Part shown: positions 19,487-40,599 of the stretch, piece by piece
Position numbering within the stretch: the first letter of the stretch is position 1
How the letters are laid out: each line of letters opens with the position of its first letter
NCBI RefSeq assembly: GCF_041956535.1
Contig: NW_027192237.1
Location: forward strand, 7,351 to 58,277
DNA: 50,927 nucleotides
Source of the DNA: Calcarisporiella thermophila CBS 279.70
Lineage: Eukaryota; Fungi; Calcarisporiellomycota
Direction of reading: 5' to 3'
The notes under the pieces: generated by a model
Database searches by the model: none
What the model saw: only the letters and a program-made list of their open reading frames with translations
What the model was told of the DNA's origin: nothing
Made by a program: the position numbers and the translations under genes

Positions 19487-21704
19487 AATTGTTGATATAG
19501 ATATCAAACGTGTGTTTATAAGGTCAAATATGAATTATAATATAAATAAGCAATGAGTTTTGATTTATATTGTGAATTCATCGAAATATTTATACAATTT
19601 CAGTCCAGTACTGTTTCTATAAGATATCAATATTATACATACGATGGTCACATTGCAAAATACAAACTAAATTTGTTGAAATAGTCTTTTTATCCAAATT
19701 CGACCATAGCCTGTAAATGTAGATTAAGGGCAGAAGGAAGGCAACTCTCTTGGAAGATTCCAGAGAGAGTAGACCAAGTACATAAATATCAGCGTCATCC
19801 AGAGTTATAGTAGAAATTGGAGTGGTTGGTTTATGGCTCATCATCAATCCTTATATAAAGTCTGTAGGGTGAAAATACTGTAAAATAGAGAAAGTATAAG
19901 CGCATGTATAAAGGACTGAGTACCTTCGTGATTCCCTAGATATTTACTAATGCTTCACGTATTTTTTCAGAGTTTTTTATATGGAGAAATGTTTACAAAC
20001 TATAGTAATATTGTGGCGTCAGAGCATTATAGAAAAACGCGGAAGTTTTTCCGTCTTTTCTATATGCTTCTATACTTTATCTATTCAATTTCACCTGGTG
20101 AATTTTGTAGATGTAAGAAGTTAGTAATAAAGATTACTTTGAACTTTCTCCCTATATCTTTTTTATTAGAATATTTCAAGCAGATAGCACATTCTACTGT
20201 TTTCATAGTCTTAGTTACAGTGTTGAAAATGAGTTTTACCACCGCCTTATTGTTGGTACTTGACTTTGCACAAGCGCAGCAATCCTCCTCTAACCTACCA
20301 AGAAACATTTCGAATGAGAGCTTTTAAAAATTAAACTAACAGCAGTTTACATTTACTAGAATTCTACCAAGATATACACTGTACTAGCCTCACTCCTACT
20401 TCGACATGCAATGTTTCGAAATCGAGATAAATTAAAGGACGGGAACAGGAGTACTTTTCAATTATACCTAGAACTGCCTGAGAAAAGATCAATATAAAAA
20501 TGTAACATCCTATCTTACCCCGATCAAGTAATTGGTATATGTTATAGATTTTCACTTTTTTGAGACGAGAGGATTGTCAAGCCAATACCTATAAATACAA
20601 CAACTCGAGATTTTTATGAACCAAATCTTACTCAATACTCTTAGCTTGGCGTTACTTCGTTTCCTTAATTTTTTCCAATAGATATAATGCATTTACTTTT
20701 CAAGCATATAGGTGAAGGAGCTTTTTTCAGCGACACGCTATTTTACTCAATTATCTTATTGTATCACAATTAGCTACTTTTATGTTGCTCACTAGATAGA
20801 TGAATATCCGTTTTCTGATGGAGAATCGCAGGCGACCACATATTAACACCCTCTGTTTGGGAGCAAATTGGAACTGAAATGGACGAATGCCGGAAAAAAA
20901 TTCCAAGATGCTTTGGACGACCACCACGCAACATCCATAAGCACAATAAGTAATATGGCTGAAGAGTGGATGAACTGGACCACCCGATTTTTTCTTACTT
21001 TTCTCGATGTTAAGTTCCCGTTCAGGTCAAGGACCAGTGGATTCTTTATTAGATGACTTAACCATTGTACGTTGTATTTATATCCATTATCTACCTGTCT
21101 CTAGAATATAAGATGGGTAGGCTAAATTCGTATCGGTCGTCTGACTTGGTCTTATTTGGACTATCACAAACACGGATATAAGTTCTTTACGGAAAAACCT
21201 CGAGTCGCTTTATGAATATTACATAGGAAAACTTCAAAACAGTGGCATGAATTTTTTTAAAATAATTTTATTATTTTTTGGTAGAGAATACACCGGAGAA
21301 ACAAGGAAGTTATTTCCTTTACATCATATAGTTTTTTTATTGTTTTTTTCACGTCCATGGTTCTATCCTGGATTAAGCACCGTCATGAAATTTCTAGCAA
21401 TTCCCAATGAAGAGATATAGTAGTATAATGGTGCCATATTTAAATTACATTTATTCTCTTTCATAATTGAATAGAAACATGCTGTTCTTCAGTTTTCTTA
21501 TTCTGGACTAAAAGATCAAAACGGCATCTTTATGCAAATCTTAGGAGTCAGATGACATACAAAGAGCAACTTAGTCACATTCAAATTACCACAATTTTTG
21601 CATTAATAATGATTTCCTCTATGAGAAAGCGTCCTGCTCGCTGGTCAAATAAAAGTGTCTAATCAAAAATAACTCTTTGTTTAGACACGATTAAAGCTTC
21701 TGTG

Positions 21705-22153: not shown

Positions 22154-23345
22154 ATGTTCATCGACTCTCCTCTTTCTCGGCTAAGCCACGAGCAGCTAGA
22201 GCAATACCTGGATCGGATCGAGACATCCTTAAAGCAGCTCAAGCTTGGTGACGAAATTCATCCTGTATATGATAACAAAGCTTACATTATAAATGGTGAC
22301 GCACTCCCATCCCCGACGCTTCATGTCCTAACCAAGATTGTGCGTGCACATGCGACACATATTCCTTTTGGAAACGCTGGAATGGTATACTTTGACGTCG
22401 ATGCACCCAACTGGGCTCCTACCGCAGATGTTAGCGCTGCCACCGAGCCACCTATGAATGTGACATACGTCAGTACGGAGCTTGAACATATCTTCCATAA
22501 GCTAATCCATCGTAAGCTGGATGCATATTGCTATGAACAAAACGAACTCCTAGCCGCAGCCTTGAGAACTCTTGGCTTTACTGTCTGGTCTGGAAAAGCC
22601 AGGGTGTCCAGTTCACAATACCTACCAGACCGAGAATACACCTTCTTTCCTCTTTATCACCAAATTCTCTTCGTTTTAATCGACGGCCAAGAATACTTAT
22701 GTGATGTTGCGTATGGCGGTGTCTTTTTCCTCGCACCCATTCCCATTCGAACGAATGAGGTAGGCATTACCATATAATGAATATTCATGTGTGTGATGGC
22801 ATCGAGCATTTGCGTACAGCGCATCTGCTCTTAGCTGCTTAATACCAACATCGTCATTGTATTTCATATTTTAGATCATCAAGGGTGTCGGCCTTATTGG
22901 CGATGAGGTGAAATTTGAACGGCAAGAATGTTCTCCTAGTGCGGCTCGTCCACATACCACTCCTGTATTTGGTACTAGTGCATTGCGCACTCCGTTAACC
23001 TTGTTCGCGCGGCATAATTCAGATGCAGATTTTGTTCCGCATTACTGTTTTACTGATGATGAGTTTTTCCCGGTGGACTATGTTTCCGCAAATATTGCTC
23101 AATATTCGGTTCGTGGCCTTTTCAGCCATCACCTATTAGTGCAACTGCCTGACAAAGACGGTCGCGGCAAAAAAACTTTATTTGATGACACATTCAAGAT
23201 ACTCCGCGATGGTGTTGTTATCGAACGTCGTACTCTTACCAGCGAAGCTGAACGCATCCAGGTGTTGAAGGAGCATTTCCACCTGGAGTTTACTGAAAAG
23301 GAATTGCGCTCTCCTCAAGCTTGTCGTTTGAGTTTGGATAAATGA
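22154..23345 (+). CDS. Arylamine N-acetyltransferase-family enzyme (~358 aa); exons 22154-22759 and 22875-23345
   Basis: Cys-His-Asp triad motifs YCYEQNELL, YHQILFV, LCDVAYGG; HIPFGN; intron 22760-22874 (GTAGGC...TTAG) joins the two ORFs in frame. Confidence 0.9.
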
Positions 23346-24140
23346 AATATACCAGTAGTAGTATTCTTATTTTTACGACAAAAGATGAGTCGCATTCATT
23401 TTATTGATACGTCCCATAACAATGATATTGTTATGGCTGCTATAGAGGACACTAGTCGTTGAAGCCGTTGATATATCCTTGAGATTCGCTATTGTTTTTT
23501 GTTGATCGAATTTACTTAGATAACAGATCGATTTACAATAAAATATATTTCAATTATTTATCAACTGCGTAGATGACTATCAGATAGAATAAATAGAAAA
23601 AAAGAAGTTAAAAAATGACTTTTCTTCCATCTCCTTCCATGGCAACCCTTATAAATCAATAAGTCAAACAGGATTCCATGGATTTATGCAAGATATTCAA
23701 CCGTGCAATGATAAAAGTGCACATAACTTTCTCTCGTTAAGTCGTCAATTACACAGGCACCCTATACAGAGGTGATTGAATTGCGAAGAAATTGCCTTAT
23801 CAATATCTCTCTTTTGGTGCTTTTAATATACATTCTAGATATACCATGATTCCTGATTCATAAAATTCCATTTATCATATGTCTATATTTTTGAAAAAAC
23901 ACATATAACAGGGGTAGCAAGTGAATCAACAGTATGAGAATTTCCATATTTTAATTATATTTGTAGCGCTTGTATTTTTCTTTATTCACTTAGGAGATAT
24001 TTGCAGAGAATTAATAAGTTGTAAAACATAGTGGCAATTTTGTCTTCATTGGTACTACTAAAGAATCATTTTGTTGAGAAAAAAAAATGAAAAAAATATA
24101 AAGTTTACACCGCCATCGAGGAAATACGATACTTATCAGC

Positions 24141-26108
24141 CTAATTAGCACCGACCGCAACTTTTTCCAACCCAATAGTCGCTTTAGCATCACTGGCTCG
24201 AACCAAAGCAGCAATCTCGTGTACGTCCAACTCAGGTTGCCACACGACTTGACAGTTTTCGAGCTTCCTTATCTTACCGCAGGTATAGCACTTTCTCCAA
24301 TCAGGCCGCGAGGCGACCCAGCTTCCACAGTGCTCACACCTCCTAGTGAATACATCCTTCCAAGTCTTCCCCTTCAAGTAGTTTAGCTCAATGTCGTAAT
24401 AACGAAGAAGACCATCCCAGCGGAAGTTGAAGCGGTTAGAGGCCACAGCCTCTCGTTTAATAGCATTCGAATACTCAATCAATTCATTAACAGTCTCAAT
24501 GGAAACAGGTTCGTACAGCGGACCATCGAGTAGCTCAATGGTCTTCCTCGCGACAGCATCATACTCTGGCACTTGGGATCCCCATTGCCAATTCTTGGAG
24601 TGGTCAACATAAGTTGCAAATGTTAGGTTGTAATCTTGTCGGATGAGTTGCCATCCAGGAATACCTATGCCAGCAAAGAACTGCCAGAGGGTAGAAACTT
24701 GGGGTCCAAGCTCAGGATGGCGGAAACAGAGGTAATTGAACTTGTTCATCTGGTGCAGTGAAGGGATAAGCTTGTCACAAAATTCGTCATATGGCTTGAA
24801 CAATTCCAAGCGTTTCTCCGGATCTGACGTAGCCAAGGCCTTGTGAGTCAGCTCAGCCGCGTATGTAGAGGTCGACATGCTAGCCGTGATTCCAGGAGAA
24901 TGAAGGGGATTGGTGAATCCTACGGCATCACCAATGGCGAACCATCCAGGTCCAGAAACCTTGGGAGACTGGTAAGCGAGTTGTTTGCGAACAAACCAAG
25001 TGGTGTTCGGTCCATATAGATCCTCGATCAACTCGTAATTCTCCATCACCCGTGAGATCATGGGGTAGCGCTTCACCCAATAGTTAAACTTCTGTTCGGC
25101 TTCCCTAGATCCGTACGGCGTCAAATCTTCGGGATACCGTGCGTCATCGCGAACAGCAAACCCAATACTAACGACCCACTGAAGCTTAAGATCAAACATC
25201 CTTGCAAGCTCTTCAGACGATGGGATTTCATCTGCAGGGGTCTTGTTCTCGGCATGATCAAGCAAGTAGTTCATCATATCCATCAAGTTAGGGATGGGAC
25301 TACCTTCCCAGGATGGCAAGCGAATCACCCAGGCCCATCCTTCGGGGAAGCAGAGGTGATTTGTGTGGTCACCCTCAAAGAATCTAAGCGGAATCTTGGA
25401 CTCATCCTTACAAGTAAAGTAGGCCCAGTATGCGTTGACGTTCCAGCCGTCGAATCGCTTGAGGCGAGCTTCCTTGGAAGCAAACTGGCGGAATCTGCCT
25501 GTAGCGTCAGCTAAGAACTGTGAAGAGATGGGCTTGGAGATTTTGGATGCGTTTTCCACTACATGGATAGTATTTCCAGTACCGGAAAGTTTTATTTCAT
25601 GGATATCAATCGTATGGCCATGGAAAACATTGACACCATGTCGCTGAGCATAAACCGTGAACAGCAGCTCGCTGATGGGACGCTCTATCTGGTAGCCAGA
25701 TAAGAACAAGCAAGGAGTTCCATTGCTGCAGAAATCGGTATAATACTCCGGATTTTGTGCATCGAAGAAATAGAAGCAGAGGCCATCCTTGAGACCAAAA
25801 ATGCGTAGGAGCACTTCCGCGTTGAGTCCCATCATCTTGCACCAAAGGGAAAAAAGAGGAAGCGTGCTTTCCCCAATTTTGTAACCTGGTTTGGGTGACT
25901 TCTCCACGACTGTGACGTTAATGCTAGGGTCAAAGCGTTTAGCGTGAATAGCGTAGATGAGACCATGAATACCGCCACCCGCAACCACTACATCCTGCTT
26001 CTCAGGAAGTGTAGGGCTAATGTTATTGGAATTAAGGATCTCTGCGGTCGAAAGGCCTTGCTGTTGAGCACGTTCGGCAAATGTGTGGCGAAGTTCAACA
26101 ATAGTCAT
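24141..26108 (-). CDS. Flavin-dependent halogenase, MalA-type with C-terminal Zn-binding Cys4 (655 aa, intronless)
   Basis: GGGIHG FAD motif, KIGEST, putative catalytic Lys107 (GLKDG), WAWVIRL (WxWxI), GDAVGFTNPLHSPG, CxxC-x12-CxxC (C591/594/607/610). Confidence 0.92.
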   Translation of the reverse strand: MTIVELRHTFAERAQQQGLSTAEILNSNNISPTLPEKQDVVVAGGGIHGLIYAIHAKRFDPSINVTVVEKSPKPGYKIGESTLPLFSLWCKMMGLNAEVLLRIFGLKDGLCFYFFDAQNPEYYTDFCSNGTPCLFLSGYQIERPISELLFTVYAQRHGVNVFHGHTIDIHEIKLSGTGNTIHVVENASKISKPISSQFLADATGRFRQFASKEARLKRFDGWNVNAYWAYFTCKDESKIPLRFFEGDHTNHLCFPEGWAWVIRLPSWEGSPIPNLMDMMNYLLDHAENKTPADEIPSSEELARMFDLKLQWVVSIGFAVRDDARYPEDLTPYGSREAEQKFNYWVKRYPMISRVMENYELIEDLYGPNTTWFVRKQLAYQSPKVSGPGWFAIGDAVGFTNPLHSPGITASMSTSTYAAELTHKALATSDPEKRLELFKPYDEFCDKLIPSLHQMNKFNYLCFRHPELGPQVSTLWQFFAGIGIPGWQLIRQDYNLTFATYVDHSKNWQWGSQVPEYDAVARKTIELLDGPLYEPVSIETVNELIEYSNAIKREAVASNRFNFRWDGLLRYYDIELNYLKGKTWKDVFTRRCEHCGSWVASRPDWRKCYTCGKIRKLENCQVVWQPELDVHEIAALVRASDAKATIGLEKVAVGAN

Positions 26109-27317
26109 TGAAACAGAATATGATTATGACTGGGTTGGAGAGTTGGAAAGACCAGATGTGAATGTCTTAAAATATGCATTCGCTCCATAGGGGAGCTTCC
26201 TCATCCGGATATATACCGAATTTCCGACTGGTTGCACTAAAGGTTAGGTGGAAAATTAAGGATACTTATAAAGTATAAGCTTGTAAAGCAAGATTGCGTA
26301 ACCAAGGATGTGGAACCAACTGATATTTTGCCGGCCTGTAGACTAGCGGTGACGAGGTATGGCTCTAGGTTGCTTAGGTGATCAGCGGTAGGTGGAAGTG
26401 TTGAAGATTGAGCTTTAATAGACGTGTCCGACCACGATAGGACGTATTCATCATGCTCATTTTTGGTAGGGTCTGTGTATGGAATCTGCTCAAACTCACT
26501 TTAATTTACGAATTAAACTGTGATATATAGCGTAACACTATCCCTAAGCGGAGATTATTTGTTGTTAGTCCCTTATCTGAGTTCGGTCATTAAAAAATCG
26601 GAACAAAAATACCTCGAAGAGGAAAATAAAGCTTAAATGAATAATTAAAATCTCAGATAACTTATGTTAATGAAAGTCTACCCTAATACTCTAATACCAA
26701 AAAAAGCTTTACAACAATGATCTCTTCATAGCAGGTGATGGTGTCATAGATTACTCATAAAATAGACTCTACAACCTTATTCACGAACCAATAGCACACA
26801 TGGCGTTATCACGAGCGGTAAGTTCCATGGATTCGATCTTACACTTAAATTACATCAGTCATGCAAATCCTTTATTGAATTCGGAAATCTAAGGAAGCTT
26901 GAGGGACAGATCATACTGCAAGTATTAAACTCAAACAAATCATGCACGGCTGTGGCTTACCACTTCGCACCCCCCCCCCGTAGAATTTGGCCAGCGAATA
27001 GCGACTAGAAAGTATTTGAACAGTAACATGAGACTCGGTATAACTTTCGACATAGCGTAACCGCGTTTTTTTGCTAGTTCCACAAATATTATCTTAGCTC
27101 TATTTGTACATAAGTTGCAACGTTGAGGTATATATAAGATAAGCTGCGTTCGTCCCCACCACAAGTTCATTTGGTAGCTGTCTGACACACCATTGCGTAT
27201 GTCACGTAGCCGTATTTAGTGCTAGTATCGAATTCTTGCTCATTAAAACCTGCAAATAATTGCTATCTTTAGTAAAACCAACGAATACTACTTTAAGATC
27301 AATTTCTTTTCAATATC

Positions 27318-29463
27318 ATGGTGAACGCTGAGGAACATGCCAATATTAATGGCCAAAATGGCTCTAATGCTAACAACATTGCCCATAAGATTACTGATCT
27401 CATCGGCCGGTATCGAATCATTAGTGAAAATGACCAATTTGACAAAACAGGTCGAGACAAATTGCTCTCCCAAATTAGCGCTATGGTGAAGAACGAGGAA
27501 GCCATCCAAATGATTCTGCCTGGTTTTGCTTTCAAGAGCCCTAATGACGACATCAAAGTCATTGGTAAACTTCCCGACAAGGCAGAAGAGCTAGCACTTT
27601 TGCATCTTGACGGTCTTTGCGACTCCATAAAGGAAATTTACTCTAAGGGAGCCAGACTCACTATTGTCAGTGACGGTCTTGTCTACAATGGTAAGTTATG
27701 ATCAAGCCTGACTAAAGTTTAGTGTTAATTGAATAAAGAGAATCTTATATCTCAGTTGCTGACATCTAAATTATTTTTTTACGCCTATAGACCTCCTGCA
27801 CGTCGCCGATGAAGATGTCTGGCGATATAGTATTGCCATCCGAGAGATGTCCAAGGACATACGCGCCGAACATATCCATTTTGTTCGTGTGAGCGAGCTG
27901 CTAGGTGAAACTGCACCCCAGACGGAGGAGGAGTACCTCACCAGAGTTAAGGGCATTCGCACTCGCCTCTTCGAGGAATATCTTCCAGCCGGGTATGACT
28001 TTGAGCAGAAGTTAAAGGAAGATGCAGATGTTTTGGCCACCCATCAAAGTTATATTAAGGTGGTAAAGAAAGATCTGGCCAAGGTGCTCAATGGCAGCGC
28101 ACCAGAAGTTGCAGAAAAAATGCAGTCCGATGTAGCCAAGCAAATGATTCAACGTGGCCAGGTACAATTAATCTGTTTAAGATATTGCTGTGAACTCTTG
28201 CTTCTTTCACCGCAATACCACTGACTCTATAGTATTGTCTTGCTCTAGTGTTTCGCCAACATTATAGCATCCAAGTATTCTAGTCACGTTCGTCTCTCGA
28301 TTCATCCTTCCAACAACATAAACAAGTTGTCCATCTCATTATTTCCTGGTAAGAAGTACGCGACTATACCCATAACGCCTTGGCATAGCACAATATTCTT
28401 GGATGCCACCGGTAATTTCGATGTACTACTGCGAGAAGATATTTCGGATAGCAAGACAAAAACCCAAGTCATTCTCAAGGACGATAAACCCTGGCTAATG
28501 CGAGAAATAGACAGTGTTTACGAGTGGGAGGGCATGGATATTGCTTTTGAACCCTTATATCCCTGTGGCATCATGGTCAAACCTACGCGCAAAGGTCAGA
28601 TATACAACTTCGTAGACGTCGACATGCAAAAGGTTAGACGACTCGCTCTATCCAACGCCCCTGTCATTCTTCGTGGTTTCGCCATGCCCGTCGAAAAGGA
28701 AATATTCCGCAGGAAAGCGGCTGAGTTAGGTGAGATCCAGATGTGGCCTTTTGGAGACATCCTGGAAGTTCGAGAAAACGCTGATCTCAACATGAATAAT
28801 GTCTTGACCCGTGAAGATATGCCTTTCCATTATGATGGCTGTTTCAAGATGGTTGAAAATGACAAAGGAGAAGTCGTTCCAAAGCCGCCACTGTGAGTAT
28901 CAATCCCTTCTTACTTCGTGCCAAATATCCTAATAATGAATAATCTAATGTGGCGTCCTCTGCTTACCGAATGCGATAGCTTCCAGATGTTCCGCAACAA
29001 AGCTAGCACCGCCGTGGGTGGATTGACCCTTTTCTCATCATCCAAACTACTCCTTGAACTGCTACCATCCGATCTTTCATTTGAGAGACTCAAAAATCTC
29101 GAGTGGTCCAGTTATACGCCAGAGAACGATGCGTTTGGAGGCAAACCCATTGAACAACCGTTGATCTCGCCTCACCCTGTAAACGGTGCGCCAACGATAC
29201 GCTTCCATGAACCATGGCCCGAGACCAAGACAGCCTCTTGCCAACCCACCTATGTCAGCATTCTAGGTGTCAGCAAAGAGGAAAGCGATGAGATTTGCGA
29301 GAAGCTGACGGTCTTATTATACGACAGGCGTATATGCTACCGTCACCAATGGCAAGAGGGCGATTTTCTCTTCAACGACAACATGGCAACGCACCATACA
29401 CGTACGGCATATCAGACCGGCTACCGCGAACTATGGCGTGTTCACGTAGATGCAGCTTGGTAA
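27318..29463 (+). CDS. Isocyanide synthase (PvcA/Dit1)-Fe(II)/2OG dioxygenase (PvcB/TauD) fusion, copy 1 (~623 aa); exons 27318-27690, 27791-28161, 28249-28892, 28980-29463
   Basis: LPGFAFKSPN, LPDKAEE, SDGLVYND, RLSIH, TPWH; WPFG, HYD (28828-36), IRFHEPW, NDN..THHTR, RELWR; three GT-AG introns restore one frame. Confidence 0.93.
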
Positions 29464-29587
29464 ATGCTGCAAGTGTAGTTTTTTCTTCATATGCGATATC
29501 AATAAAAACTATGTCTTAATCATAGAGTAGCAGTATATTCTGATCTAATATGGTATTAAAGATAAAAACTTGGCGTGGTATACATAC

Positions 29588-29925
29588 TGTACATACAAAT
29601 ATACCCATATAAGAAGTGGGCATAGGGAAAACATAGGGAAATAATATGGAACACATGCGGAATACCTCACTTTCCTATAATTTCCCTATAATTTCCTTTA
29701 TTTCCTCTAATTTTACTATAAATTCCGAATCCTTACCCATATAAAAATCCATATAAAATCCATATAAAATCCATATAAACTCTATTAAAAATTATAGAAA
29801 ATATCAGGAAATCATAAGGAAAATGAGGTGTTCACTATGTTTTCCGCATTTTTTCCCTATTTTTTCCCTATGTGATTTTCTATAGTTTATATTTGTATAT
29901 AGCGTATACGCTATATACAAATATA
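29588..29925. repeat. Foldback/MITE-like element with CCATATAAAAT tandem core and adjoining perfect 38-bp palindrome (29888-29925)
   Basis: Left arm (CATAGGGAAA repeats, ACCTCA) is the imperfect reverse complement of the right arm; TATATTTGTATATAGCGTA|TACGCTATATACAAATATA. Confidence 0.7.
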
Positions 29926-30396
29926 GGCTCCAAGTTAAATAAATAGTGATATATTTTATAGGATTCCTTGGAGTTTAGTGTATCATATTGGATCACCCTG
30001 ATCGTTCTCATTCATGCGTGGGATCAGGCAGTGGACGAGGCGCCGGCTTCAGCCCGTGTTCTGCATACAATAGCATATGACGACGTTTATTATTATCGGG
30101 CCTCGCTGGCTACCCGTGTGCTTAGACTTGAATTGCGTTATCTTCAAATTCGCATCAACTCCCTTATATCTCCGATAAATATTTTTTGATCTATTCCTTA
30201 CTAGTCAGTGTGTACTACGAAGTAAAATAAAATTATTAAGTACTACGTTAGACTACATTAGAGCTCTTTGATACGCTACATAATTTCCTGCTGAATACCA
30301 CTGAGCCATAAAATTATGTAATAATTATTTTCATTGATGTTTATATACCCTGGAGCCTCCCTCTTCGTCCTTATCAAGGTACAGAGCCTATTCGAG

Positions 30397-31956
30397 ATGG
30401 TCGTGCCGCGCGTCCCGCATCTTTTCATTTCATTCTCAACTGGCCATGGCCATGCTGTGCCAATCTTAAGTTTTGCTCGTCGTCTAATTAATACGCCGAA
30501 TGCTCTCTCAGACACGGGCGCCACCCATGGGCATAAAATTCTGGTCACCATAGCCATAGTAGACACGTTTGCCGATGAACTTGTCGCTACTGGGTTCATT
30601 CCCTCACCCGATGAACATGCCGTAATCTTACGTGGTTCCTATGGTGAGGTGCGTCTAGTCAAGCTACACGACCTTCTCGTGATTGATCCTCAAAAGGACG
30701 GCAAGTATCCCTCCAAAGGTTTCCAATGTTATATCGAGTCAGCTCGTCAAACTGGCAGTGCCATCGAGCGTTATCTTCGCGAGCAGCAAAATCCAAATAA
30801 CCTTCACCCCGTCACGGCTGTGATCTTGGACACATTTATTGTTCGCAGCTGTCCCAAGACACCAAACGCTGGATTACCCTTTTATATTATAATGACAACA
30901 GGATTTTCAACGAGCCCAGATACTATGTTCCCACTGCCTCCGCTGGACATGAAAGCGGATGTACCATATGATCAAGATGTCCGTATGGATTCTATCTCAC
31001 CCGATAACTTCGGATTGATATTTGCACAGCGTCACCGTGCCGCCACCCTGCTTCCCGAATGTCGTGGATTCCTGTGGAATACCGTGGACGGTATTGAAGG
31101 CGATATCTTGCAAACCAGCAAAGTATGGCAAGCCAATTATCCAGGCGTACCTGTGCGCTTCTTAGGCCCTCTCAACTGGATTGATTCGGTGGATAACTCT
31201 GTGCCATCCACTGCTTCTTCAGCCGCCACTGCTCAAAAAGACAGTAGACTCCAGAAGCAGCAAGCCATTGATGCATATGTCCGGCAGTGGATGGATAGTC
31301 AAGAGGACGCCTCTGTGTTATTTGTGGCATTTGGTTCGGTGACCGTAACTACCCCTGAGCAAAAGGTCGAACAGCTTCGAGGACTGATTTCAAGTGGTAG
31401 GCGCATTCTGTGGGTGTTGCGTGGTAGCATGGAACCTATCTTTCCATATGTTCAAAATCATCCTGGCATTCCAGAAGGCATGCTCGTTGCTCATAGCAAT
31501 ATCAAAGTGGGAGACAAACCTGGTGAGGTAGTGATAGTACCATGGGCTCCTCAACGCGACATCCTAGCTCATCGTGCTACAGCTGCATTTTTGACGCACT
31601 GTGGTTGGAATTCGACGATGGAAGCGCTCATGTATGCTCGTCCCACTCTCGGATGGCCAGGATTTTGCGACCAGGCCGATTCGGCCAACTTCTTAAAGAA
31701 GCTTGGCGTGGGTATCAACTTCCCAGATACTGCCGCTCCCGTTGTGGGTCCAGTACCAAGCATGGAATCTGCCCGCGTTGTTCCCCATGATGAAATCACT
31801 GAAAGAATTAACGAGCTCTTTGCTTCCGAGAATTTCCCTCAATTCGTCGCAAATGCGAAAAAATATAGCTTAGCCATGCGATCTGCTTGGAATATTCCTG
31901 ATGGATCTTCCTATCTTGCCCTTGTGAACTTTGTAGCAGAACTTGACAAGTTTTAG
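30397..31956 (+). CDS. GT1 UDP-glycosyltransferase (~519 aa, intronless)
   Basis: N-terminal GHGH catalytic His; VLFVAFGS; full PSPG box WAPQRDILAHRATAAFLTHCGWNSTMEALMYARPTLGWPGFCDQ; ATG at 30397 chosen as start. Confidence 0.93.
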   Translation: MVVPRVPHLFISFSTGHGHAVPILSFARRLINTPNALSDTGATHGHKILVTIAIVDTFADELVATGFIPSPDEHAVILRGSYGEVRLVKLHDLLVIDPQKDGKYPSKGFQCYIESARQTGSAIERYLREQQNPNNLHPVTAVILDTFIVRSCPKTPNAGLPFYIIMTTGFSTSPDTMFPLPPLDMKADVPYDQDVRMDSISPDNFGLIFAQRHRAATLLPECRGFLWNTVDGIEGDILQTSKVWQANYPGVPVRFLGPLNWIDSVDNSVPSTASSAATAQKDSRLQKQQAIDAYVRQWMDSQEDASVLFVAFGSVTVTTPEQKVEQLRGLISSGRRILWVLRGSMEPIFPYVQNHPGIPEGMLVAHSNIKVGDKPGEVVIVPWAPQRDILAHRATAAFLTHCGWNSTMEALMYARPTLGWPGFCDQADSANFLKKLGVGINFPDTAAPVVGPVPSMESARVVPHDEITERINELFASENFPQFVANAKKYSLAMRSAWNIPDGSSYLALVNFVAELDKF

Positions 31957-33488
31957 TTGTGGGCTTGTTCTTGATTTTTTGGATTTAAAGCGCGTTCATT
32001 ATTTTTGATAGAATATGACAATTTGAATATGATAAATATCTATTGCAATTTTGAATTGATTTCAATTTGATGTATATATATTTTGATAATCAATGAAGCA
32101 CATTTGCACGCTTCCAGTAATACACGCTCATGGGAAGGAACACAGGTTCCAACTGGCAGAGTATTTTCAAACTTCAGCTAATGAGATTGATGTTGACAAT
32201 ATTTTGAGTTTAATTATTCAATCTGCTCATTGAATTTTTTATCATACTTCGTGCTAAGAAAACTTGTGGAAAAAAGGGCACATACATTCAGAAAAAAAAA
32301 AACGGTGAACTTGGCATCGCCTACTTGAATAATTCTATAACACTACCTTTTTGGTAGATATAATAAATATGGAAATTTAGTGAGGAACCATATAATAAAA
32401 CAAGGGAATTAAATACTCAAAGAAAACGATCTAATTATTTAATGGTCAAAAGATACTGTATGCTCTAAGATAAGCTGAGGATAATAATATATAAATAAAA
32501 GATAAAAATAAATATGGTCATGACTGGTGTCATTAAAGAAAGCTGAGCGGGTTTACGTCAAGGCTTAGAGAGATATTGCTCGAGTGGTTCGTCCCGCTAC
32601 AACTTCCTCTTGATTGGGCCGAGTATAGTCCTCGCATCTATTACTCTATGAGCTGCCATTCTCTCCATATACCACTTTGTGAGCGATGCTTAATATTCTA
32701 TTGGTTCATATGCACGAGAAGGACAAGAGATACAAGGTATGCACGAGGTAAAATCCATTAAGACGTGTTTTACAGCCATGAGTTCACTAATGACTTTTAA
32801 CTGTTGTCTTAAATCTTATTACCTACATATATGAAGTCGACCTCTTCTCTCTCTTCTTTCAATGTATATGAGTCGTCCTCATACTCTTTGAAAGGAGAGA
32901 GGAATTCTGTGCATAATAGCCAACCCTGATTCAACTACTTTTTCCTCCTACCCCTTCAAGAAGTCTCGAGTTGAGCGGATGGGGAAGGATACTGTTCCAC
33001 TAGCTTTAAGCGAAGAAAGATTCAGATTTGACCACAAAATAAGATCAAATTTATCTCGATTTCATTAATATACATACTGATTAAAAAAATGGAACACTTC
33101 GACAAAAAACATATTTCTTCATTTTTTCGAGCCTTCATGAAGAAAGGACACGGAATTGTCAGATTGTATTTTATTAAGCAAATTTCACAATGCTCTTGGA
33201 TGGGTTTACGAAACCATACAATTCTATGAAAGACAACAAAAAGAAATAGGCAAAAATGCTTGAGAAAGTTAAGATATTGTACGGTTAAACAGGGCATCTC
33301 TTTAAATTAGAGTGAGTAGGTAAATATAACATCCAATGGGTACTATGGCACGCAACAAAATTCATAAATATGAGTGCATAAAAAATAAAATATTACGGAT
33401 GGGAGCGTAGAAGCAAGAATAATCAAATGTCTTCACAAAGAGATCTTAATCATAAATAGGTCTCAAGTTATAAAATCGGAGTTTGGTA

Positions 33489-35276
33489 CTATACAGGAGA
33501 CATGTCTGACTCCTTCTCATTTTTCATACCTTCCTCGGCATTCAATGGCGTTGGAGTGGACGCGGCAGAAGCCTGTGGTGTTAATTCGATGTGTTTCAAG
33601 CCCAAGGTCAGTAAGATCATTATTCCAGTTAATGGCGTCATGGCGATGAAAACCTTGTGGAAGGCTTCTCCATAAGCAACACCAATGATTTTTTGATCTT
33701 CCGGTGACAACGTCGATATGAATTCAATGCCTTTGTTGGCAGTTTCAATGAGAACAGCGCCATTCGGTAAGCCAGAAAGGGACTCTTGAATTATATTTAG
33801 CTGGATGGCGCTAAAGATGGCAACGCCAATGACACCACCAATAGTACGGAAGAAAGCGATCAGCGTGGTTCCCGAAGACATGTCCTGCGGTACCAGCGTT
33901 GCTTGCGCAGCGATAATGGAAGTTTGGAAGGAGAAACCTGCGCCAATACCGCAAATGACAAGAAAACCGGCAGACATGCCGGGCGAACTATGTTGATCTA
34001 GGAGGATTAATAGGCCACTTCCGAGGGTGCTGATAATAGAGCCCAATAGGATGAAAGGGCGATAGGATCCCGTCTTGGAGACAACCATCCCGGATAAAGT
34101 AACGGTCAAAGCGAGCGGAATCAAGAAAGGGAGCAATTGTAGACCGGCTTGGATAGCCGATTCACCACGCACGGCTTGGAAAAAGATAGGAATGACGAAG
34201 ATCAGCCCAAAGAAAAATATGCCGAAGACAAAGGCAATGAGCGAACTGAGGGTGTAGTTAAGACTCCTGTAGAGCCCAAGTGGCATGATGGGCTCAACGG
34301 CCACCTTAGCTTCGATGAAAAAGAAGATGCCGCACAGGACAACACTAACGACATAGAGTGCAATGATCACAGCGCTATTCCACGCGTGAACATGGCCGCC
34401 CCACAGTGTCGCCAACAAAAAGCAAACCACGGCGCTTACAAAGGTCAGACTGCCAAGCCAGTCAATTCGCCGGAGTTTTGCCATGAACGATGTCCGTACC
34501 TCTGGAAGCACAAGGAATATCATCGTCAATATAATGCCCGGAACTACAAGTGGAACGTTGATGTAGAAGGACCATCGCCATGACACCTTATCGGTAAATA
34601 CACCACCAAGGAGGGGCCCAATAGCGCTTGCCAGTGCAAACATCATGCCAAACACACCCATATACTTGCTGGACTGCTGAACGCCAACCAGCTTCACCAG
34701 AAGGACCATCGGTAGGTCCATCATGCCGGCCGCGCCTATACCCTGGATCAACCGTGCGCCAATCAACATAGACATACTCTGCGCGGCTCCACTTATCACA
34801 GAGCCAACCAAGAAGATGGCCATCGAGAATAGATACGTGTTTTTTCCGCCAAAGATATCCGCTAATTTACCGTAAATCGGCTGCAGCGAGCTACCCGCCA
34901 GCAAATATACCGTAGCAACCCAGCTGACTGATTCAAACTCATGGAAGTCGTAGGCAATCCTCGTGAGTGCCGTTGAAACAATCGTATTGTCGAGAGCACC
35001 CAAAAAGAAAGATATTGACAAACTACCAAGCACGAGGAAAAGATCGCGACCACTAAGCGCATTTCCATCGTCGGTGCTGTGCATGGTGTCCGACTGTTTA
35101 ACATCGGCATGCTGATCAACCAATTCAGTTGATGGCAAAGACGCATCCGAAACCGCATCTCGCGGAAGGATCACCTCATCTTGAGACACAGATTTCACTT
35201 CACAAGACTCCGTTGAGCCGACCGAATCGAGCGTCGGCTGATCAACTTCCGCAGAGTGGCTCGGCGATGCTGCCAT
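33489..35276 (-). CDS. MFS DHA2 (14-TM) drug/toxin efflux transporter (595 aa)
   Basis: LDNTIVSTAL, YGKLADIFG, RLIQGIGAAG, GPLLGGVFTDKVSWRWSFYINVP, FFRTIGG. Confidence 0.95.
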   Translation of the reverse strand: MAASPSHSAEVDQPTLDSVGSTESCEVKSVSQDEVILPRDAVSDASLPSTELVDQHADVKQSDTMHSTDDGNALSGRDLFLVLGSLSISFFLGALDNTIVSTALTRIAYDFHEFESVSWVATVYLLAGSSLQPIYGKLADIFGGKNTYLFSMAIFLVGSVISGAAQSMSMLIGARLIQGIGAAGMMDLPMVLLVKLVGVQQSSKYMGVFGMMFALASAIGPLLGGVFTDKVSWRWSFYINVPLVVPGIILTMIFLVLPEVRTSFMAKLRRIDWLGSLTFVSAVVCFLLATLWGGHVHAWNSAVIIALYVVSVVLCGIFFFIEAKVAVEPIMPLGLYRSLNYTLSSLIAFVFGIFFFGLIFVIPIFFQAVRGESAIQAGLQLLPFLIPLALTVTLSGMVVSKTGSYRPFILLGSIISTLGSGLLILLDQHSSPGMSAGFLVICGIGAGFSFQTSIIAAQATLVPQDMSSGTTLIAFFRTIGGVIGVAIFSAIQLNIIQESLSGLPNGAVLIETANKGIEFISTLSPEDQKIIGVAYGEAFHKVFIAMTPLTGIMILLTLGLKHIELTPQASAASTPTPLNAEEGMKNEKESDMSPV

Positions 35277-36097
35277 GGTTATGATAATGAAGAGTATTTG
35301 GAATTGATCTCGTTACAGCGGTAATGAACTGTACTTTTGGAAAATGAATGCAATCTTTACAACACGATTCCGACAATCCTATCTAATAAAATATAATAAG
35401 TGGGACTTCGAAGAGATGTTGATTGGGAAAGGAAGATGGAATGTCGAACTAATCTGATTTTGAGGGGTAACCAAGACGTGACGCAGCGCGGGATGTACCG
35501 GTATTGCGACGAACTTAATTCTATTAAATAACTCTCGGGGTTCTCAAGCTATCTTAGCTCCTATCGCAGCTTCACAATATTTCAGAAAATTTAAGGTAAT
35601 AAAATCGACCCTGTGTAAACAGCAATAGAGGATCACCAAAAACTTATTGTATTAAAGTATGCTATTCGTCCGTGATGAACAACGATATCTTGAGTTTCAC
35701 GAATACCATTGTCCTTAGATAAGTGAATAATTATTGGATAAACTTATTATCAAACATTAATATTAAAATTAAAAACTTTAAATATAACTCAGTTTCCCTC
35801 TACTGTCCTATTGATCCATTTTGAGCACATTTTTCTTCACAACCCTAGCATTTTGTTACCGTATTGTAAACCAGCTCAGCGGATTGCGTAACCTACAAAA
35901 ATTTGTCATAGATTTGGACTCACTATATCACGGTCCTACCATATTCGCCTAAATCCCATAGAATATGTCGGAGCATCGCAATTGTTACCTCAAGATCTTT
36001 GGATCTTCTATCCTTCGACCACGATGTACAATCTAATAGGTGTTCGATATTGTATAAACTTTGCACAATAGGCATTAAGTCATTTTGTTGTGACTCA

Positions 36098-36299
36098 CCC
36101 TACAAAAAATGTGCATGGTGAAAACAGACAGGATATGAAGATAGGAGGCAAGGAGAATATTTTGCGATTCTCTATAATTCTACTGTGATTTCTAAACTCT
36201 TCACCATGTTAAAATATTATACTAATTTAGAGAATCGCAAAAGTTCTCCAGGCCTCTTGTATGTTACTATATGTTTTCACCATATGCTTTTTTGTAGAG
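36098..36299. mobile_element. CCCTA-family MITE in the MFS/ICS2 divergent promoter region
   Basis: CCCTACAAAAAATGTGCATGGTGAAAACA...TGTTTTCACCATATGCTTTTTTGTAGAG; internal GCGATTCTCTA/TAGAGAATCGC inverted pair as in the 40838 MITE; no TSD match. Confidence 0.65.
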
Positions 36300-36741
36300 G
36301 TAGAAGCCTAAAATTTTAGGTTTAGCCATGTTTTGTGAATGACCCTACCGATATATGAAATATAATAAAATTTACACATCGGGGTGCGTCCGAACTATCA
36401 TTCACTTGCTTTACCATATTGTAACATTTTCTCTAAACTCTTGGCCGGGTCACCTATAGTCACCTAATTTGCCCCTTATATTAGAGATTAAGATAAAGCG
36501 CAAAATAACAAGCCAAACCCAGAGTTCACATTTTAATTTTTCTCCTACACTTGTTTTGCTTCTTCTTAACATTCTTAACGACGCGTGGTCTGTCAAAAAC
36601 TGCCACCTACTATTAAAGATCTCCATATCGACGAACGCAGTACTCTTAACCTCATTTAAGAAAAGCATCAGTTCTTCCAATAATTCCCACTAGCTAGTGT
36701 ATATTGTTGTTTTCCTATTACTCAATTGAATTTCGCAAAAA

Positions 36742-38828
36742 ATGGTTGGAATCATCCCTACTCCCGATATTCAGCTAGGTCTTGAGTCTATTAAGTATCA
36801 GAATGCCGACCAGAAAGCTCACAAAATATGCGAAATTCTCGCCCGATATCGTATCTCCGGCCCAGTCGACTTGTTTGAACAAGTTGGTCGTCCCAAGATC
36901 CATGCCAAAGTGCGAAACATGATTTTGAATAGTCAGCCAGTAGAAATGATCCTTCCCGCATATCCCTTCAAGAGCCCCAATAGCACATATAAAGTGATTG
37001 GTGTTCATCCAGATAAAGCTGAGGAATTCTCATTAATCCACCTAAACGGACTTTGCCAGTCTATTACCGAAGTGTATCCAGGTGGCGCCAAGGTTGTTAT
37101 TGCCAGCGATGGACTTGTATACAATGGTAAGGTTCTTATACAATTTACATTAGGTGGTAGCAATTAGTAACATATTTTAACTCACGTGTTTCTGCTCGTC
37201 TTTTACAAAAATAGATCTCTTGAGCGTGTCTGATCAAGTGACTTGGAGGTATGATTTGGGCATCCGCGACATAGTAAGGAAACTCGACCTAAAGCATATT
37301 GAGTTTGTTCGCGCCTGCGAATTAATCGGTGAACCTGTTCCTCAAAGTGAAGAACAGTATATCGAGCGAATTGGCCATGTCAAGGCTCGACTTTTCAATG
37401 AATATCTTCCCGAGGATTATGACCTCGAGAAAAATATTCAAGAAGATCCCAATGCATTGGCTACTTATCGTGGTTATCTTCGTTTTCTCGCTCTCGATCT
37501 CAAGGGGGTCTTGGCCGGAAATATGGCAAAATCTGCTCAAAAGAAGGCGATCAAAGTTATTGCAAAGGAAATGATTAGACGCGGCAAGGTAAGCATTGGC
37601 ATGACAAGTGGATTGGTCGCACATTGATCTGGTAATCTAATATACGGTAAATATCTAAATTGAATGTTGTCTGGTAGTGCTTTGCAAAACTTATTGCAAT
37701 TAATTTCGCATCGAGCGTGCGGCTATCAATTCATGCCGCCGACAACACCGACAAACTCGCCATAACTTTGTTCCCTGGCCAGCATTTTGTAAAAAATCCT
37801 GTGACTCCTTGGCACAATACACCATATCAAGATGGAAATGCCACTTTTGCTGTGCTTCATCGCGAGAATATCTCAGAAAGCAATGTAAAAACACAAATTG
37901 TCCTGAAGGAAGACAAACCTTGGATTGTACGCGAGAATAACGACACATATGATTGGGAGAGAATGGATCTTAACTTTGAGCTCATGTACCCATGTGGTAT
38001 CATGATTTCACCCGTGAACAAGAATCAAGTATATAATCTCGTCGATGTCGACATGAAGAAAGTTCGACATCTCGCTCTCTCCAATTCTCCTGTCATTTTC
38101 CGTGGCTTCTCCATGCCCGCAGACGATGAAATCTTCCGCAAGAAAGCGGTTGAGCTAGGTGATGTTCAGATACGATCTTTTGAAGATATCCTAGAAGTTG
38201 AAGAAAACGCTGATTCCATTATAACTACGACTCGAGAAACTGTGCCATTCAATTTCGATGGTTGCTTCAAGATGAGCAAAAATGAAAAGGGAAAAATCGT
38301 TTCTCAGCCACCACTGTAAGTATCATCAAAGGCTGCAAAGCTAAACTCCCTTGCCATGACTAATCTAATTGACATTACTCTCGGATGAACACTAGATTCC
38401 AGATTTTCCACAGCAACTTTAATGCGGCCGTGGGTGGGTTGACTCTTTTCTCATCGTCCAAATTGTTCCTTAAGATGCTTCCGGAAGGCATATCTCTTGA
38501 GATGCTCAGTAAGCTAGAGTGGACCAGCAGTGGGTCTGCAAACGGTGATTTCATAGACACCCACCACAAATTACCACTGATCGTGCCCCACCCTGTGACT
38601 GGAGCACCCGTATCGCGCTTTCATGAGCCATGGCTGCAGTCTAAAACAAGCGGCAAACCTATCGATATTAGTATAGTAGGAGTCAACAAAGAGAAGAGCA
38701 AAGACATTTGCGAAAAGCTGACGGCCCTGTTTTACGACAGGCGCGTTTGTTATCGTCATCAATGGGAAAGTGGTGATATTCTCATCAGCGACACTATGTC
38801 CGTGCATCATGCACGTGCGGTATATTAA
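36742..38828 (+). CDS. Isocyanide synthase-dioxygenase fusion, copy 2 (~609 aa), dioxygenase domain probably inactive; exons 36742-37126, 37215-37588, 37678-38315, 38396-38828
   Basis: LPAYPFKSPN, SDGLVYND, TYRGYLRFL, RLSIH, TPWH intact; same three intron positions as copy 1; HYD changed to NFD (38251-59); premature TAA removes RELWR. Confidence 0.9.
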
Positions 38829-39020
38829 TGTGGTTCTTGTGAGTTATGATGTATTTACGTTGATTCAACTTAGTGAAGGAAGGAGGCTTAATTGAGGAGT
38901 TTATTTATTTTTTCTTGTCCATATATATTATATTTTTAAGATATCTATATTCGTATAAACTTCCATACTTTTAAGTGAGCTTGAAGCAATTTCGAAGATG
39001 AATAGTGTCCGTATTTTTAA

Positions 39021-40599
39021 TTTAGCACTAAGCCTAGCGTATGCGACGGCTTAGTATAAATGGAATAGGCAGTCAGCAGTCCATGCTTCACGATGATGAG
39101 GCCGTTTTATTGGACAAATGAGCTACTTCCAGAGAAGTTTGCATAGAAAATTAAAGAAATTTAAAGAAAAATAAAAAAATCTGAGAATAATCAAGAGTAT
39201 AAAAGGCTGCCGTTTCCCAAGTGCAACTCCTTGGCCGTTTTTTGAGCTGGCATACTTTCGTTTGAGAAATGGAGCCCTCGTTCACGCAAGCAACAAATCA
39301 GCACGCGAGTACTGAAGGATCTCTCTTGGCACTACTCTCTCCAGTGTCTATCCGCGAGAGCCATCAGTGGACGCCAGCGAACGATATAGCGGACGCGATT
39401 GGGCACAAAACACCATACGCACCCGAGTCCATCCTCACGTCTGAGGAGCGACAAGTCAATACGCACAGGGAAAATCGGCGGATTCCTGCCTTCTATATCG
39501 CTCAGCAATCGGGGAACTACAGACAAGCCATCCATCTCATCTCGATTCCATCGTCTCTAGATTCCTTAGGATAGTAGACAGATTAGCGCCCCCCTTAAAC
39601 CTGGCAGAAGACCCTATCGACATCACCCCGATTCTGGAACATCTCAGAGGAACGCCCAACACTGAACTATCCCTGCGCAACCTTACTTACAAGTTGGCAT
39701 GGCTCCTGGCGGTAGTCACCTTTCCTAGAGTATCCGCTCTAGCACGCATGGACCTTCAGTCGATCGCGGTCGACGTAACAATGATGAAGGGGAAGATAAT
39801 AGCACCGAAGGAAACGAGAAGAAATCGGCGCATCATAAAACCCTTCCATGTCCATCGATTCCCAGACCCCAACCTCTGTCCAGTAGAGTGTTTCATTGAA
39901 TATAGGAGGCGCTGGCAAGAGCAGGGTAAACTGCAACAAGGCTCAGAGGTATTCCTCTGCCCTGGAATTGCTCGCCCTGCCAGGCCCGCAACGATTTCGC
40001 GATGGATCAAAACAATCTTCGCAATCGCCTCACCCGACGCAAGAGCCCACGACGCGCGAAAAACAGGAGCCGCCCTCGCTCTACGAAGATTCAATGTAGA
40101 CACAGTGGTCGCAATAGGGAATTGGTCTTCCACCACTACTTTCGACCTATACTACCGCAGGGATAGAGCTGTAAATGCCGATATCTCGGGCGCGCTTCTC
40201 TCCTTAGGACTCGAGGAAGCGCGCTAGGGCCCTCTGGATCATCGTGAAGCATGGACTGCTGACGTAGTCCGCATTCTGTTTTAGCACTAAGCCTAGCGTA
40301 TGCGACGGCTTAGTATAAATGGAAAAGGCAGTCAGCAGTCCATGCTTCACGATCCCACCCCTAAATGTTTTTATTTTTTATTTTTTCTTATATCTCCCCA
40401 CCCCTCTTCTCGGGAGGGCCAAGGAGTTGCACTTGGGAAACGACAGCCTTTTATACTCTTGATTATTCTCAGATTTTTTTATTTTTCTTTAAATTTCTTT
40501 AATTTTCTATGCAAACTTCTCTGGAAGTAGCTCATTTGTCCAATAAAACGGCCTCATCATCGTGAAGCATGGACTGCTGATGTAGTCCGCATTCTATTT
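39021..40599 (+). mobile_element. Non-autonomous DIRS-type retrotransposon: 164-bp ITRs (39073-39236, 40417-40580), internal end-junction region (40238-40353), no RT
   Basis: Near-perfect ITRs; internal copy of the right end joined to the left end; tyrosine recombinase ORF. Confidence 0.9.
39694..40227 (+). CDS. DIRS tyrosine recombinase catalytic domain (5'-truncated)
   Basis: R (PRVS), K (PKET), LCPV, HxxR (HDAR), GNWSS, YYRR; upstream in-frame DITPIL...LSLRNLTYKL. Confidence 0.85.
   Translation: MAWLLAVVTFPRVSALARMDLQSIAVDVTMMKGKIIAPKETRRNRRIIKPFHVHRFPDPNLCPVECFIEYRRRWQEQGKLQQGSEVFLCPGIARPARPATISRWIKTIFAIASPDARAHDARKTGAALALRRFNVDTVVAIGNWSSTTTFDLYYRRDRAVNADISGALLSLGLEEAR

What the first reader, a model, noticed from the sequence alone, without database searches (positions are those of the whole stretch)
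22154..38876. Candidate new fungal pathway: halogenated, glycosylated isocyanide gene cluster (2x ICS-dioxygenase, MalA-type halogenase, UGT, NAT, MFS)
Seen: six contiguous, mostly intact secondary-metabolism genes forming an island in otherwise TE-decayed DNA, with no NRPS or PKS in the window. Established: PvcA/IsnA-type synthases turn Tyr or Trp into isocyanides; PvcB/IsnB dioxygenases decarboxylate them to vinyl isocyanides; bacterial rhabduscin and byelyankacin are glycosides of such aglycones; MalA chlorinates indole rings. Inference: the cluster makes a ring-halogenated aryl or indolyl vinyl-isocyanide glycoside, possibly acylated and exported by the MFS. I know of no characterised fungal isocyanide cluster with this enzyme combination, but cannot check that here.
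Basis: partly seen in the sequence, partly recalled or inferred. Interest (0 to 1): 0.93.

Follow-up and report, generated by a model that had tools for sequence, protein, structure and literature searches.

The report
Halogenase-linked fungal isocyanide gene cluster
A heat-loving, early-branching fungus carries three versions of a gene cluster that probably makes a chlorinated, sugar-capped isocyanide from tyrosine; its core enzyme pair also occurs in lichens, moulds and a yeast, and I found no paper describing it.

Summary
The six genes are real. The genome is Calcarisporiella thermophila (Mucoromycota). The core (MalA-type halogenase, isocyanide synthase-dioxygenase fusion, UGT, MFS) recurs intact on contig C30 and partly on C2. 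The NAT is found only in the window copy. The two fusions are not equivalent. ICS1 has an intact dioxygenase with the decarboxylating (PIsnB-type) signature and a divergent synthase. ICS2 has an intact synthase, but its dioxygenase has lost an iron-ligand His and ends at a premature stop. Parajaminaea shows a more advanced form of the same split. Tyrosine is likelier than tryptophan: the halogenase lacks MalA's Glu494, and the UGT needs a hydroxyl. Best guess (about 50%): a chloro-4-hydroxystyryl isocyanide glycoside, a fungal parallel to rhabduscin. MalA nests among synthase-linked halogenases, on a partly open backbone. No product, expression or enzyme data exist here. I found no paper on this pairing in the held library. 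An unchecked first-stage note on this same stretch also proposed the split; the scan has not reported it on other DNA.

The parts
22154..23345 (+). Arylamine N-acetyltransferase-fold acyltransferase, 358 aa, intron 22760-22874; accessory, membership uncertain
   Evidence: PF00797 in both exons; Cys-His-Asp present; no copy beside the C30 or C2 clusters, four paralogs elsewhere at 31-40%
24141..26108 (-). MalA-family Zn-binding flavin-dependent halogenase, 655 aa
   Evidence: MalA' E 2e-248; Lys107 = MalA Lys108, WxWxI motif, four Zn Cys, His253/Ser409/Phe489 equivalents kept; Gly482 at Glu494 plus 7-aa insertion; TM 0.93
27318..29463 (+). ICS1: isocyanide synthase-dioxygenase fusion, 623 aa; exons 27318-27690, 27791-28161, 28249-28892, 28980-29463; divergent synthase, intact dioxygenase
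   Evidence: PF05141 and PF02668 exon by exon; synthase 52% and dioxygenase 82-84% to the C30/C2 paralogs; His-Tyr-Asp at 28828-28836; 42 of 43 conserved dioxygenase columns; 55 of 63 conserved synthase columns, with changes at 27519-27539 and 28042-28053
29584..29907 (.). Palindromic non-coding element (MITE-like) between ICS1 and UGT; not part of the pathway
   Evidence: inverted arms; at least 12 other places in the genome at 75-88%
30397..31956 (+). GT1 UDP-glycosyltransferase, 519 aa from this ATG (a 539-aa model starts at 30337), intronless, PSPG box ending in Gln
   Evidence: PF00201; 76% to the C30 copy; next relatives are own-genome paralogs at about 30%
33489..35276 (-). MFS DHA2-type efflux pump, 595 aa
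   Evidence: PF07690; TIGR00711 220 bits; 78% to the C30 copy
36742..38828 (+). ICS2 (VTP21DRAFT_9061), 609 aa; exons 36742-37126, 37215-37588, 37678-38315, 38396-38828; intact synthase, decayed dioxygenase
   Evidence: identical to P0173; synthase 74-75% to C30/C2 with dN/dS about 0.11; Asn in place of the iron-ligand His at 38251-38253; TAA stop ahead of both conserved Arg
38829..38876 (+). Remnant of the ICS2 C-terminus beyond the stop, with a second stop
   Evidence: aligns to the last 16 residues of ICS1

Best explanation
This is one of three related isocyanide biosynthetic loci of Calcarisporiella thermophila and belongs to a wider, apparently undescribed family defined by an isocyanide synthase linked to a MalA-type halogenase. 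Likely route: (1) the ICS2 synthase domain, possibly ICS1's as well, turns L-tyrosine and ribulose-5-phosphate into the isocyano acid; (2) the ICS1 Fe/2-oxoglutarate dioxygenase decarboxylates it to 4-hydroxystyryl isocyanide; (3) the halogenase chlorinates the ring ortho to the phenol, once or twice, at an unknown step in the order; (4) the UGT glycosylates the phenol; (5) the MFS exports the product, presumably a metal-binding antimicrobial. The NAT is an optional add-on of this copy. The two fusion genes share the work that one intact fusion does on C30 and C2. Shown: gene anatomy, motifs, linkage, reciprocal divergence. Inferred: every chemical step, the substrate, the halogen and the product.
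For: Four-gene core repeated on C30 at 76-87% protein identity with silent sites 40-46% different. Halogenase and synthase within about 13 kb in Usnochroma, Xanthoria, Antarctic endolith contigs, ERR14888963, A. clavatus, P. hordei and Parajaminaea. The linked synthases form one clade with the Calcarisporiella ones (100/99; 96), and the partner dioxygenases do too (100/98). ICS1 has Lys at PIsnB K107 and His at N188, the published signature of vinyl-isonitrile-forming enzymes, plus the H101, D103, H250, W74 and R265 equivalents (PMC9467999). Pointers to tyrosine: a UGT acceptor needs a hydroxyl (own knowledge); the A. clavatus cluster holds a DAHP synthase; the Parajaminaea cluster holds a phenol-hydroxylase-type monooxygenase and an intradiol dioxygenase; Glu494, which helps MalA bind its indole substrate (PMC9144378), is Gly here. 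Related clusters carry DJ-1/PfpI genes, a common isocyanide-cluster feature (PMC10153163). IsnA+IsnB+GT suffice for rhabduscin (PMC6386379).
Against: No sequence rule for Tyr versus Trp in the synthase was available to test. The K/H signature comes from bacterial enzymes and is shared by most fungal fusions surveyed, so it does not single out this cluster. No flavin reductase, regulator or DJ-1 gene lies in the window cluster, and no shared promoter motif was found. Most ascomycete members show no intact dioxygenase or UGT within 10 kb, so the family's products differ. Some close halogenases have no synthase nearby.
Confidence: 0.5

Rival explanations
1. Same early steps, but the isocyanide is only an intermediate: the end product is a halogenated styryl formamide, amide, isothiocyanate or dimer, with the NAT acylating an amine or the sugar.
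For: The NAT has an intact triad and sits at the cluster edge. Related clusters carry hydratase-like DJ-1 and GST genes. The genome has unlinked DJ-1 genes at 33-35% to the cluster-type ones.
Against: No DJ-1, GST or P450 in any of the three Calcarisporiella loci as far as read. C30 has no NAT in its readable flanks.
Confidence: 0.2
2. Tryptophan route: a halo-indolyl vinyl isocyanide, the halogenase acting on the indole ring as MalA does.
For: About 56-60% identity and the same fold as MalA; His253, Ser409, Phe489 and Ser129 equivalents kept. A DAHP synthase feeds Trp as well as Tyr.
Against: Glu494 is replaced and the segment carries an insertion shared by synthase-linked halogenases. An indolyl vinyl isocyanide offers no hydroxyl for the UGT. 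Characterised fungal aromatic synthases (XanB, Dit1) use Tyr (own knowledge; PMC5974471).
Confidence: 0.12
3. The window copy is a decaying duplicate and C30 is the working cluster; the ICS1/ICS2 pattern is decay rather than division of labour.
For: ICS2 has two stops; the contig is small and transposon-rich; the C2 copy already has its UGT broken by a retroelement.
Against: Halogenase, UGT, MFS, NAT and ICS1 are open. ICS2 synthase dN/dS is 0.11-0.12 and ICS1 dioxygenase 0.13-0.15. The losses are complementary, and the same complementary pattern recurs in Parajaminaea.
Confidence: 0.1
4. ICS1's synthase is an active enzyme with a different amino-acid substrate, so the window cluster makes two isocyanides or a mixed product.
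For: It keeps 55 of 63 family-conserved columns despite 48% divergence. It branches outside ICS2+C30+C2 (AU p 0.0002) and its silent sites are near saturation, so it looks like an older paralog kept under selection.
Against: It has lost a Pro invariant in all other members and the Tyr-Arg pair shared with bacterial PvcA. In Parajaminaea and ERR14888963 the second gene's synthase half is plainly degraded.
Confidence: 0.08

Closest known systems
Rhabduscin cluster (isnA, isnB, GT) of Xenorhabdus/Photorhabdus
   Same: Synthase + PIsnB-type decarboxylating dioxygenase + glycosyltransferase, predicted to give a 4-hydroxystyryl isocyanide glycoside (PMC6386379, PMC9467999).
   Different: Bacterial, no halogenase. 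The fungal UGT is a lineage-specific eukaryotic GT1, so the resemblance is convergent, not homologous as a cluster.
Xanthocillin (xan) cluster of Aspergillus fumigatus, XanB ICS-dioxygenase
   Same: Fungal synthase-dioxygenase fusion (PMC5974471); a 761-aa A. fumigatus fusion (P0188, taken to be XanB from memory) has the same dioxygenase motifs.
   Different: That protein is in a different synthase clade. The window cluster has no P450 for dimerisation, no regulator and no hydratase, and adds halogenase, UGT and NAT.
A. fumigatus icsA/icsB (4G) cluster and GCF 1 of Nickles et al.
   Same: Two synthase genes in one cluster; loss of the dioxygenase half from fusions has been proposed (PMC5974471, PMC10153163).
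   Different: No halogenase is mentioned for either; products unknown. Reciprocal loss across a pair is not described in the text read. I could not test whether this family equals one of the catalogue's GCFs.
MalA/MalA' of the malbrancheamide NRPS cluster
   Same: Same fold, Zn site, catalytic Lys and flavin motifs; 56% identity.
   Different: Different substrate-binding segment, no Glu494, no NRPS context. MalA sits inside a clade whose sampled early branches are synthase-linked.

Membership tests
Fungal isocyanide synthase clusters | PF05141 backbone with intact synthase motifs | tested here: met
   ICS2 keeps 58 of 63 conserved columns, including all near-invariant ones but one Leu-to-Ile change; E 6e-24 to PvcA
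Fungal isocyanide synthase clusters | Linked tailoring and transport genes conserved across loci | tested here: met
Fungal isocyanide synthase clusters | Co-regulation (shared promoter motif or co-expression) | tested here: inconclusive
Fungal isocyanide synthase clusters | An isocyanide is produced | not testable with these tools
   needs expression and LC-MS
PIsnB-type vinyl-isonitrile dioxygenases (ICS1) | His-x-Asp...His iron triad, substrate Arg and Trp, Lys/Arg at K107, Asn/His at N188 | tested here: met
   alignments to 7TCL and 3EAT; PMC9467999; 42 of 43 columns
PIsnB-type vinyl-isonitrile dioxygenases (ICS2) | Iron triad and substrate Arg | tested here: not met
   first His is Asn; stop ahead of both Arg; 7 of 43 conserved columns lost
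MalA-class flavin-dependent halogenases | Catalytic Lys, WxWxI motif, GxGxxG, four-Cys Zn site, MalA fold | tested here: met
MalA-class flavin-dependent halogenases | Indole-alkaloid substrate site (Glu494 segment) | tested here: not met
   Gly482 and a 7-residue insertion; role of Glu494 from PMC9144378
Rhabduscin pathway | IsnA + IsnB + orthologous GT | tested here: not met
   the UGT's only close relatives are Calcarisporiella paralogs; works-like claim only
xan gene cluster family | XanB-clade fusion with P450, regulator and hydratase | tested here: not met
   different synthase clade; none of those genes in the window cluster
A catalogued ICS gene cluster family (Nickles et al.) | Listed in the 3,800-cluster catalogue | tested here: inconclusive
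   A. clavatus NRRL 1 is among the input genomes, so its cluster may be catalogued unremarked; 'halogenase' and 'Calcarisporiella' do not occur in the preprint or in the held, truncated supplement; journal version not held
Arylamine N-acetyltransferases | Cys-His-Asp triad and PF00797 | tested here: met

The most novel reading that the evidence does not exclude
An isocyanide synthase-halogenase partnership spans Mucoromycota, Basidiomycota and Ascomycota (notably lichens) and makes an unreported class of ring-halogenated fungal isocyanides. It is the original setting of MalA-type halogenases, MalA being a later recruit to an NRPS pathway. Its two-domain backbone has repeatedly been split between duplicate genes and re-joined by recombination.
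Probability: 0.35. Interest if true: 0.8.

Novelty: new variant of a known kind. Interest (0 to 1): 0.62.

Why it matters
Few fungal isocyanide clusters have known products, and I found none with a halogenase in the held papers. This family predicts halogenated isocyanides in culturable fungi (A. clavatus NRRL 1, Penicillium species, C. thermophila), and the intact four-gene C30 copy is a compact test case. It offers a natural substrate class for some of the many uncharacterised MalA-like halogenases (277 in one survey, PMC9144378), which are of interest as biocatalysts. It shows a repeated secondary-metabolite cluster in a Mucoromycota thermophile, where few are expected. It also gives a testable case of a bifunctional enzyme dividing its two jobs between duplicates in separate lineages.

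Tried and rejected
Contamination: rejected, as the core lies on three contigs including a 1.57-Mb one, the UGT and NAT have native paralog families, and a genome-wide repeat sits inside the cluster. Simple recent tandem duplication of ICS1/ICS2 in the window: rejected for the synthase half (AU p 0.0002; introns 1-2 unalignable), with the caveat that long branches can bias this test. Recent transfer from a sampled ascomycete: not supported, as the Calcarisporiella halogenases lie outside the 41-row clade that holds the lichen, Eurotiales and MalA rows (99 SH-aLRT); older transfer versus differential loss is unresolved. Shared promoter motif: none across all promoters; GCGTAAC occurs 4 times against 0.7 expected but only in the window and was picked after the fact. 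Satellite resistance genes: genome DJ-1 genes are only 33-35% like the cluster-type ones, and the loci fetched hold no match to the Parajaminaea monooxygenases. The first metagenome scan with the single protein found nothing; the alignment scan worked. Spliced models were searched exon by exon by reference; the joined-protein database search was left out. Joined models were used only inside local scripts, with X at the ICS2 stops. The halogenase tree is the quick version, since the careful search did not finish.
Full report
OBSERVATION. All six genes are present with clean GT-AG introns and Pfam matches over cut-off: NAT (22154-23345 +), halogenase (24141-26108 -), ICS1 (27318-29463 +), UGT (30397-31956 +), MFS (33489-35276 -) and ICS2 (36742-38828 +). 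The halogenase and ICS1 form one divergent pair, the MFS and ICS2 another. The flanks are transposon remains. Spliced genes were searched exon by exon by reference. Joined models were built only inside scripts, and the joined database search was left out.

ORGANISM AND SISTER LOCI. The top halogenase hit, annotated from Calcarisporiella thermophila, is 100% identical to a gene on contig C30 of this genome, and the ICS2 model equals VTP21DRAFT_9061. The genome is therefore C. thermophila, Mucoromycota. It holds four synthase fusions and three MalA-type halogenases, all paired in three loci. C30 has halogenase, one intact fusion, UGT and MFS in the same order and orientation as the window, at 76-87% protein identity with 40-46% of fourfold-degenerate sites changed, which indicates long purifying selection. 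C2 has halogenase and an intact fusion, but its UGT is cut after 122 codons by a retroelement and it lies at a contig end. No NAT lies beside either sister locus; the other NATs are 31-40% paralogs elsewhere. Assembly gaps flank C30, so that absence is not absolute.

THE TWO FUSIONS DIFFER. Against the intact C30/C2 proteins, ICS1 is 52% identical in the synthase half and 82-84% in the dioxygenase half; ICS2 is 74-75% and 61-63%, with the crossover at the linker. ICS2's dioxygenase has Asn for the first iron-ligand His and a stop ahead of both conserved Arg, and has lost 7 of 43 conserved columns; ICS1's has lost one. ICS2's synthase is intact with dN/dS about 0.11. ICS1's synthase has lost an otherwise invariant Pro and the Tyr-Arg pair shared with bacterial PvcA, yet keeps 55 of 63 conserved columns: it is altered, not shown to be dead. 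It branches outside ICS2+C30+C2 (AU p 0.0002), its silent sites are near saturation, and only its third intron resembles C30/C2. So either ICS1 or the C30/C2 gene is probably a recombinant mosaic of an older and a younger paralog (inference; long branches may bias the test).

CONSERVATION ELSEWHERE. The closest outside halogenases (59-66%) come from lichen-forming and Eurotiales fungi. A synthase lies within about 13 kb of the halogenase in Usnochroma, Xanthoria, a dozen Antarctic endolith contigs (probably one species), run ERR14888963, Aspergillus clavatus, Penicillium hordei and the basidiomycete yeast Parajaminaea phylloscopi. A more distant halogenase on a soil contig also sits beside a fusion. 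No synthase was seen near the Bogoriella, P. coprophilum or Gyalolechia halogenases, or near three distant ones with long flanks. The linked synthases form one clade with the Calcarisporiella proteins (100/99). The ascomycete synthases carry only a remnant of the dioxygenase half. Parajaminaea has two adjacent genes, one with intact synthase plus dioxygenase remnant and one with synthase remnant plus intact dioxygenase; the latter falls in one clade with the window dioxygenases (100/98). ERR14888963 also has a second gene with a degraded synthase, cut by the locus edge. Partners elsewhere are MFS, DJ-1/PfpI, GST and Zn-cluster regulators, a DAHP synthase in A. clavatus, and a phenol-hydroxylase-type monooxygenase and intradiol dioxygenase in Parajaminaea. 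The UGT has no close relative outside this genome, so glycosylation is a local addition.

THE HALOGENASE. It has MalA's fold (TM 0.93), catalytic Lys, WxWxI motif and Zn site, but Gly at Glu494 and a seven-residue insertion there. The same segment motif marks 28 of the 120 hits, including the synthase-linked ones that kept this stretch. Glu494 helps MalA bind premalbrancheamide (PMC9144378), so MalA's indole specificity does not carry over. In a quick tree the three Calcarisporiella enzymes are sister to a 41-row clade holding the lichen, Eurotiales and MalA rows, whose early branches are synthase-linked and within which MalA lies. The backbone inside that clade is partly open, so 'MalA was recruited from an isocyanide cluster' is a hypothesis. 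The tree gives no donor for a transfer. High identity across phyla and the lack of other Mucoromycota among the 120 listed hits leave old transfer or repeated loss both open.

MECHANISM. Shown: anatomy, motifs and linkage. From the literature: synthase then Fe/2-oxoglutarate desaturation builds vinyl isonitriles, and Lys/Arg at K107 with Asn/His at N188 marks the decarboxylating type (PMC9467999); ICS1 has Lys and His. IsnA, IsnB and a GT make rhabduscin (PMC6386379). Inferred: tyrosine to isocyano acid (ICS2), to 4-hydroxystyryl isocyanide (ICS1), ring chlorination, O-glycosylation and export; 50%. Rivals: further conversion of the isocyanide (20%), tryptophan route (12%), decaying copy (10%), ICS1 using a second substrate (8%).

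NOVELTY. Isocyanide clusters, fusions, two-synthase clusters and loss of the dioxygenase half are known (PMC5974471, PMC10153163). Four paper searches found no synthase-halogenase cluster, and the catalogue preprint mentions neither halogenases nor Mucoromycota. The library lacks most subscription journals, and the A. clavatus cluster may be catalogued without comment. Unchecked first-stage notes on this same stretch propose the reciprocal split and a mosaic origin; I had reached and tested these before reading them, and they are not independent support.

VERDICT. A real, conserved and apparently undescribed variant of fungal isocyanide clusters, with a testable product prediction but no chemical or expression evidence. 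Interest 0.62.

Noticed in passing
window 10067-10513 (-): Intronless 148-aa SnoaL-like gene (PF07366, E 2e-15) about 12 kb from the cluster, separated by a Ty3 element; no sign that it belongs to the pathway.
   Followed up: partly
window 29584-29907: Palindromic MITE-like element with at least 12 other copies in the genome; a partial copy also lies upstream of the C2 UGT.
   Followed up: partly
window 39021-40599: Short tyrosine-recombinase (DIRS-like) retroelement remnant with repeated ends directly after ICS2; PF00589 match below cut-off.
   Followed up: no
window 16380-19507 (-), 42157-43474 (-), 47323-48153 (-), 2615-3118 (+), 8195-8578 (-): Ty3 gag/RT/RNase H, copia gag/integrase, a second Ty3 gag, and Tc1-type DDE and HTH fragments.
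   Followed up: no
L019 2387-6460 (G000:C2 about 1560386-1564460): The UGT of the C2 sister cluster breaks off after 122 codons and is followed by a DIRS-type RT/RNase H element.
   Followed up: partly
L025 3255-4802 (G000:C2 about 1551255-1552802): Berberine-bridge-type FAD oxidase 5 kb beyond the C2 halogenase, next to a P450-like fragment; possible extra genes of the C2 locus.
   Followed up: no
L033 10001-19229 (Gyalolechia ehrenbergii): Halogenase, regulator-like gene, MFS and DJ-1 in the lichen cluster order but with no synthase within 10 kb.
   Followed up: no
L001 12684-14351 and L035 633-2842: The 555-aa no-Pfam gene beside the lichen halogenases is 51% like the C-terminal part of the A. 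clavatus Zn-cluster gene, so it is probably the pathway regulator; Calcarisporiella has no counterpart in the window.
   Followed up: partly
L066 781-3608 (SRR24994259): Unnamed organism with a synthase-dioxygenase gene 58% like the C30 dioxygenase half, next to a DJ-1 gene 70% like Parajaminaea's.
   Followed up: no
G000:C35 139223-150321 and C22 52627-142758: Expanded, partly tandem family of intronless GT1 glycosyltransferases from which the cluster UGT seems to derive.
   Followed up: no
window 26292-26303 and 35882-35893: A 12-base word containing TTGCGTAA (bZIP-site-like) occurs in both divergent promoters of the window cluster but not in the C30 or C2 promoters.
   Followed up: partly
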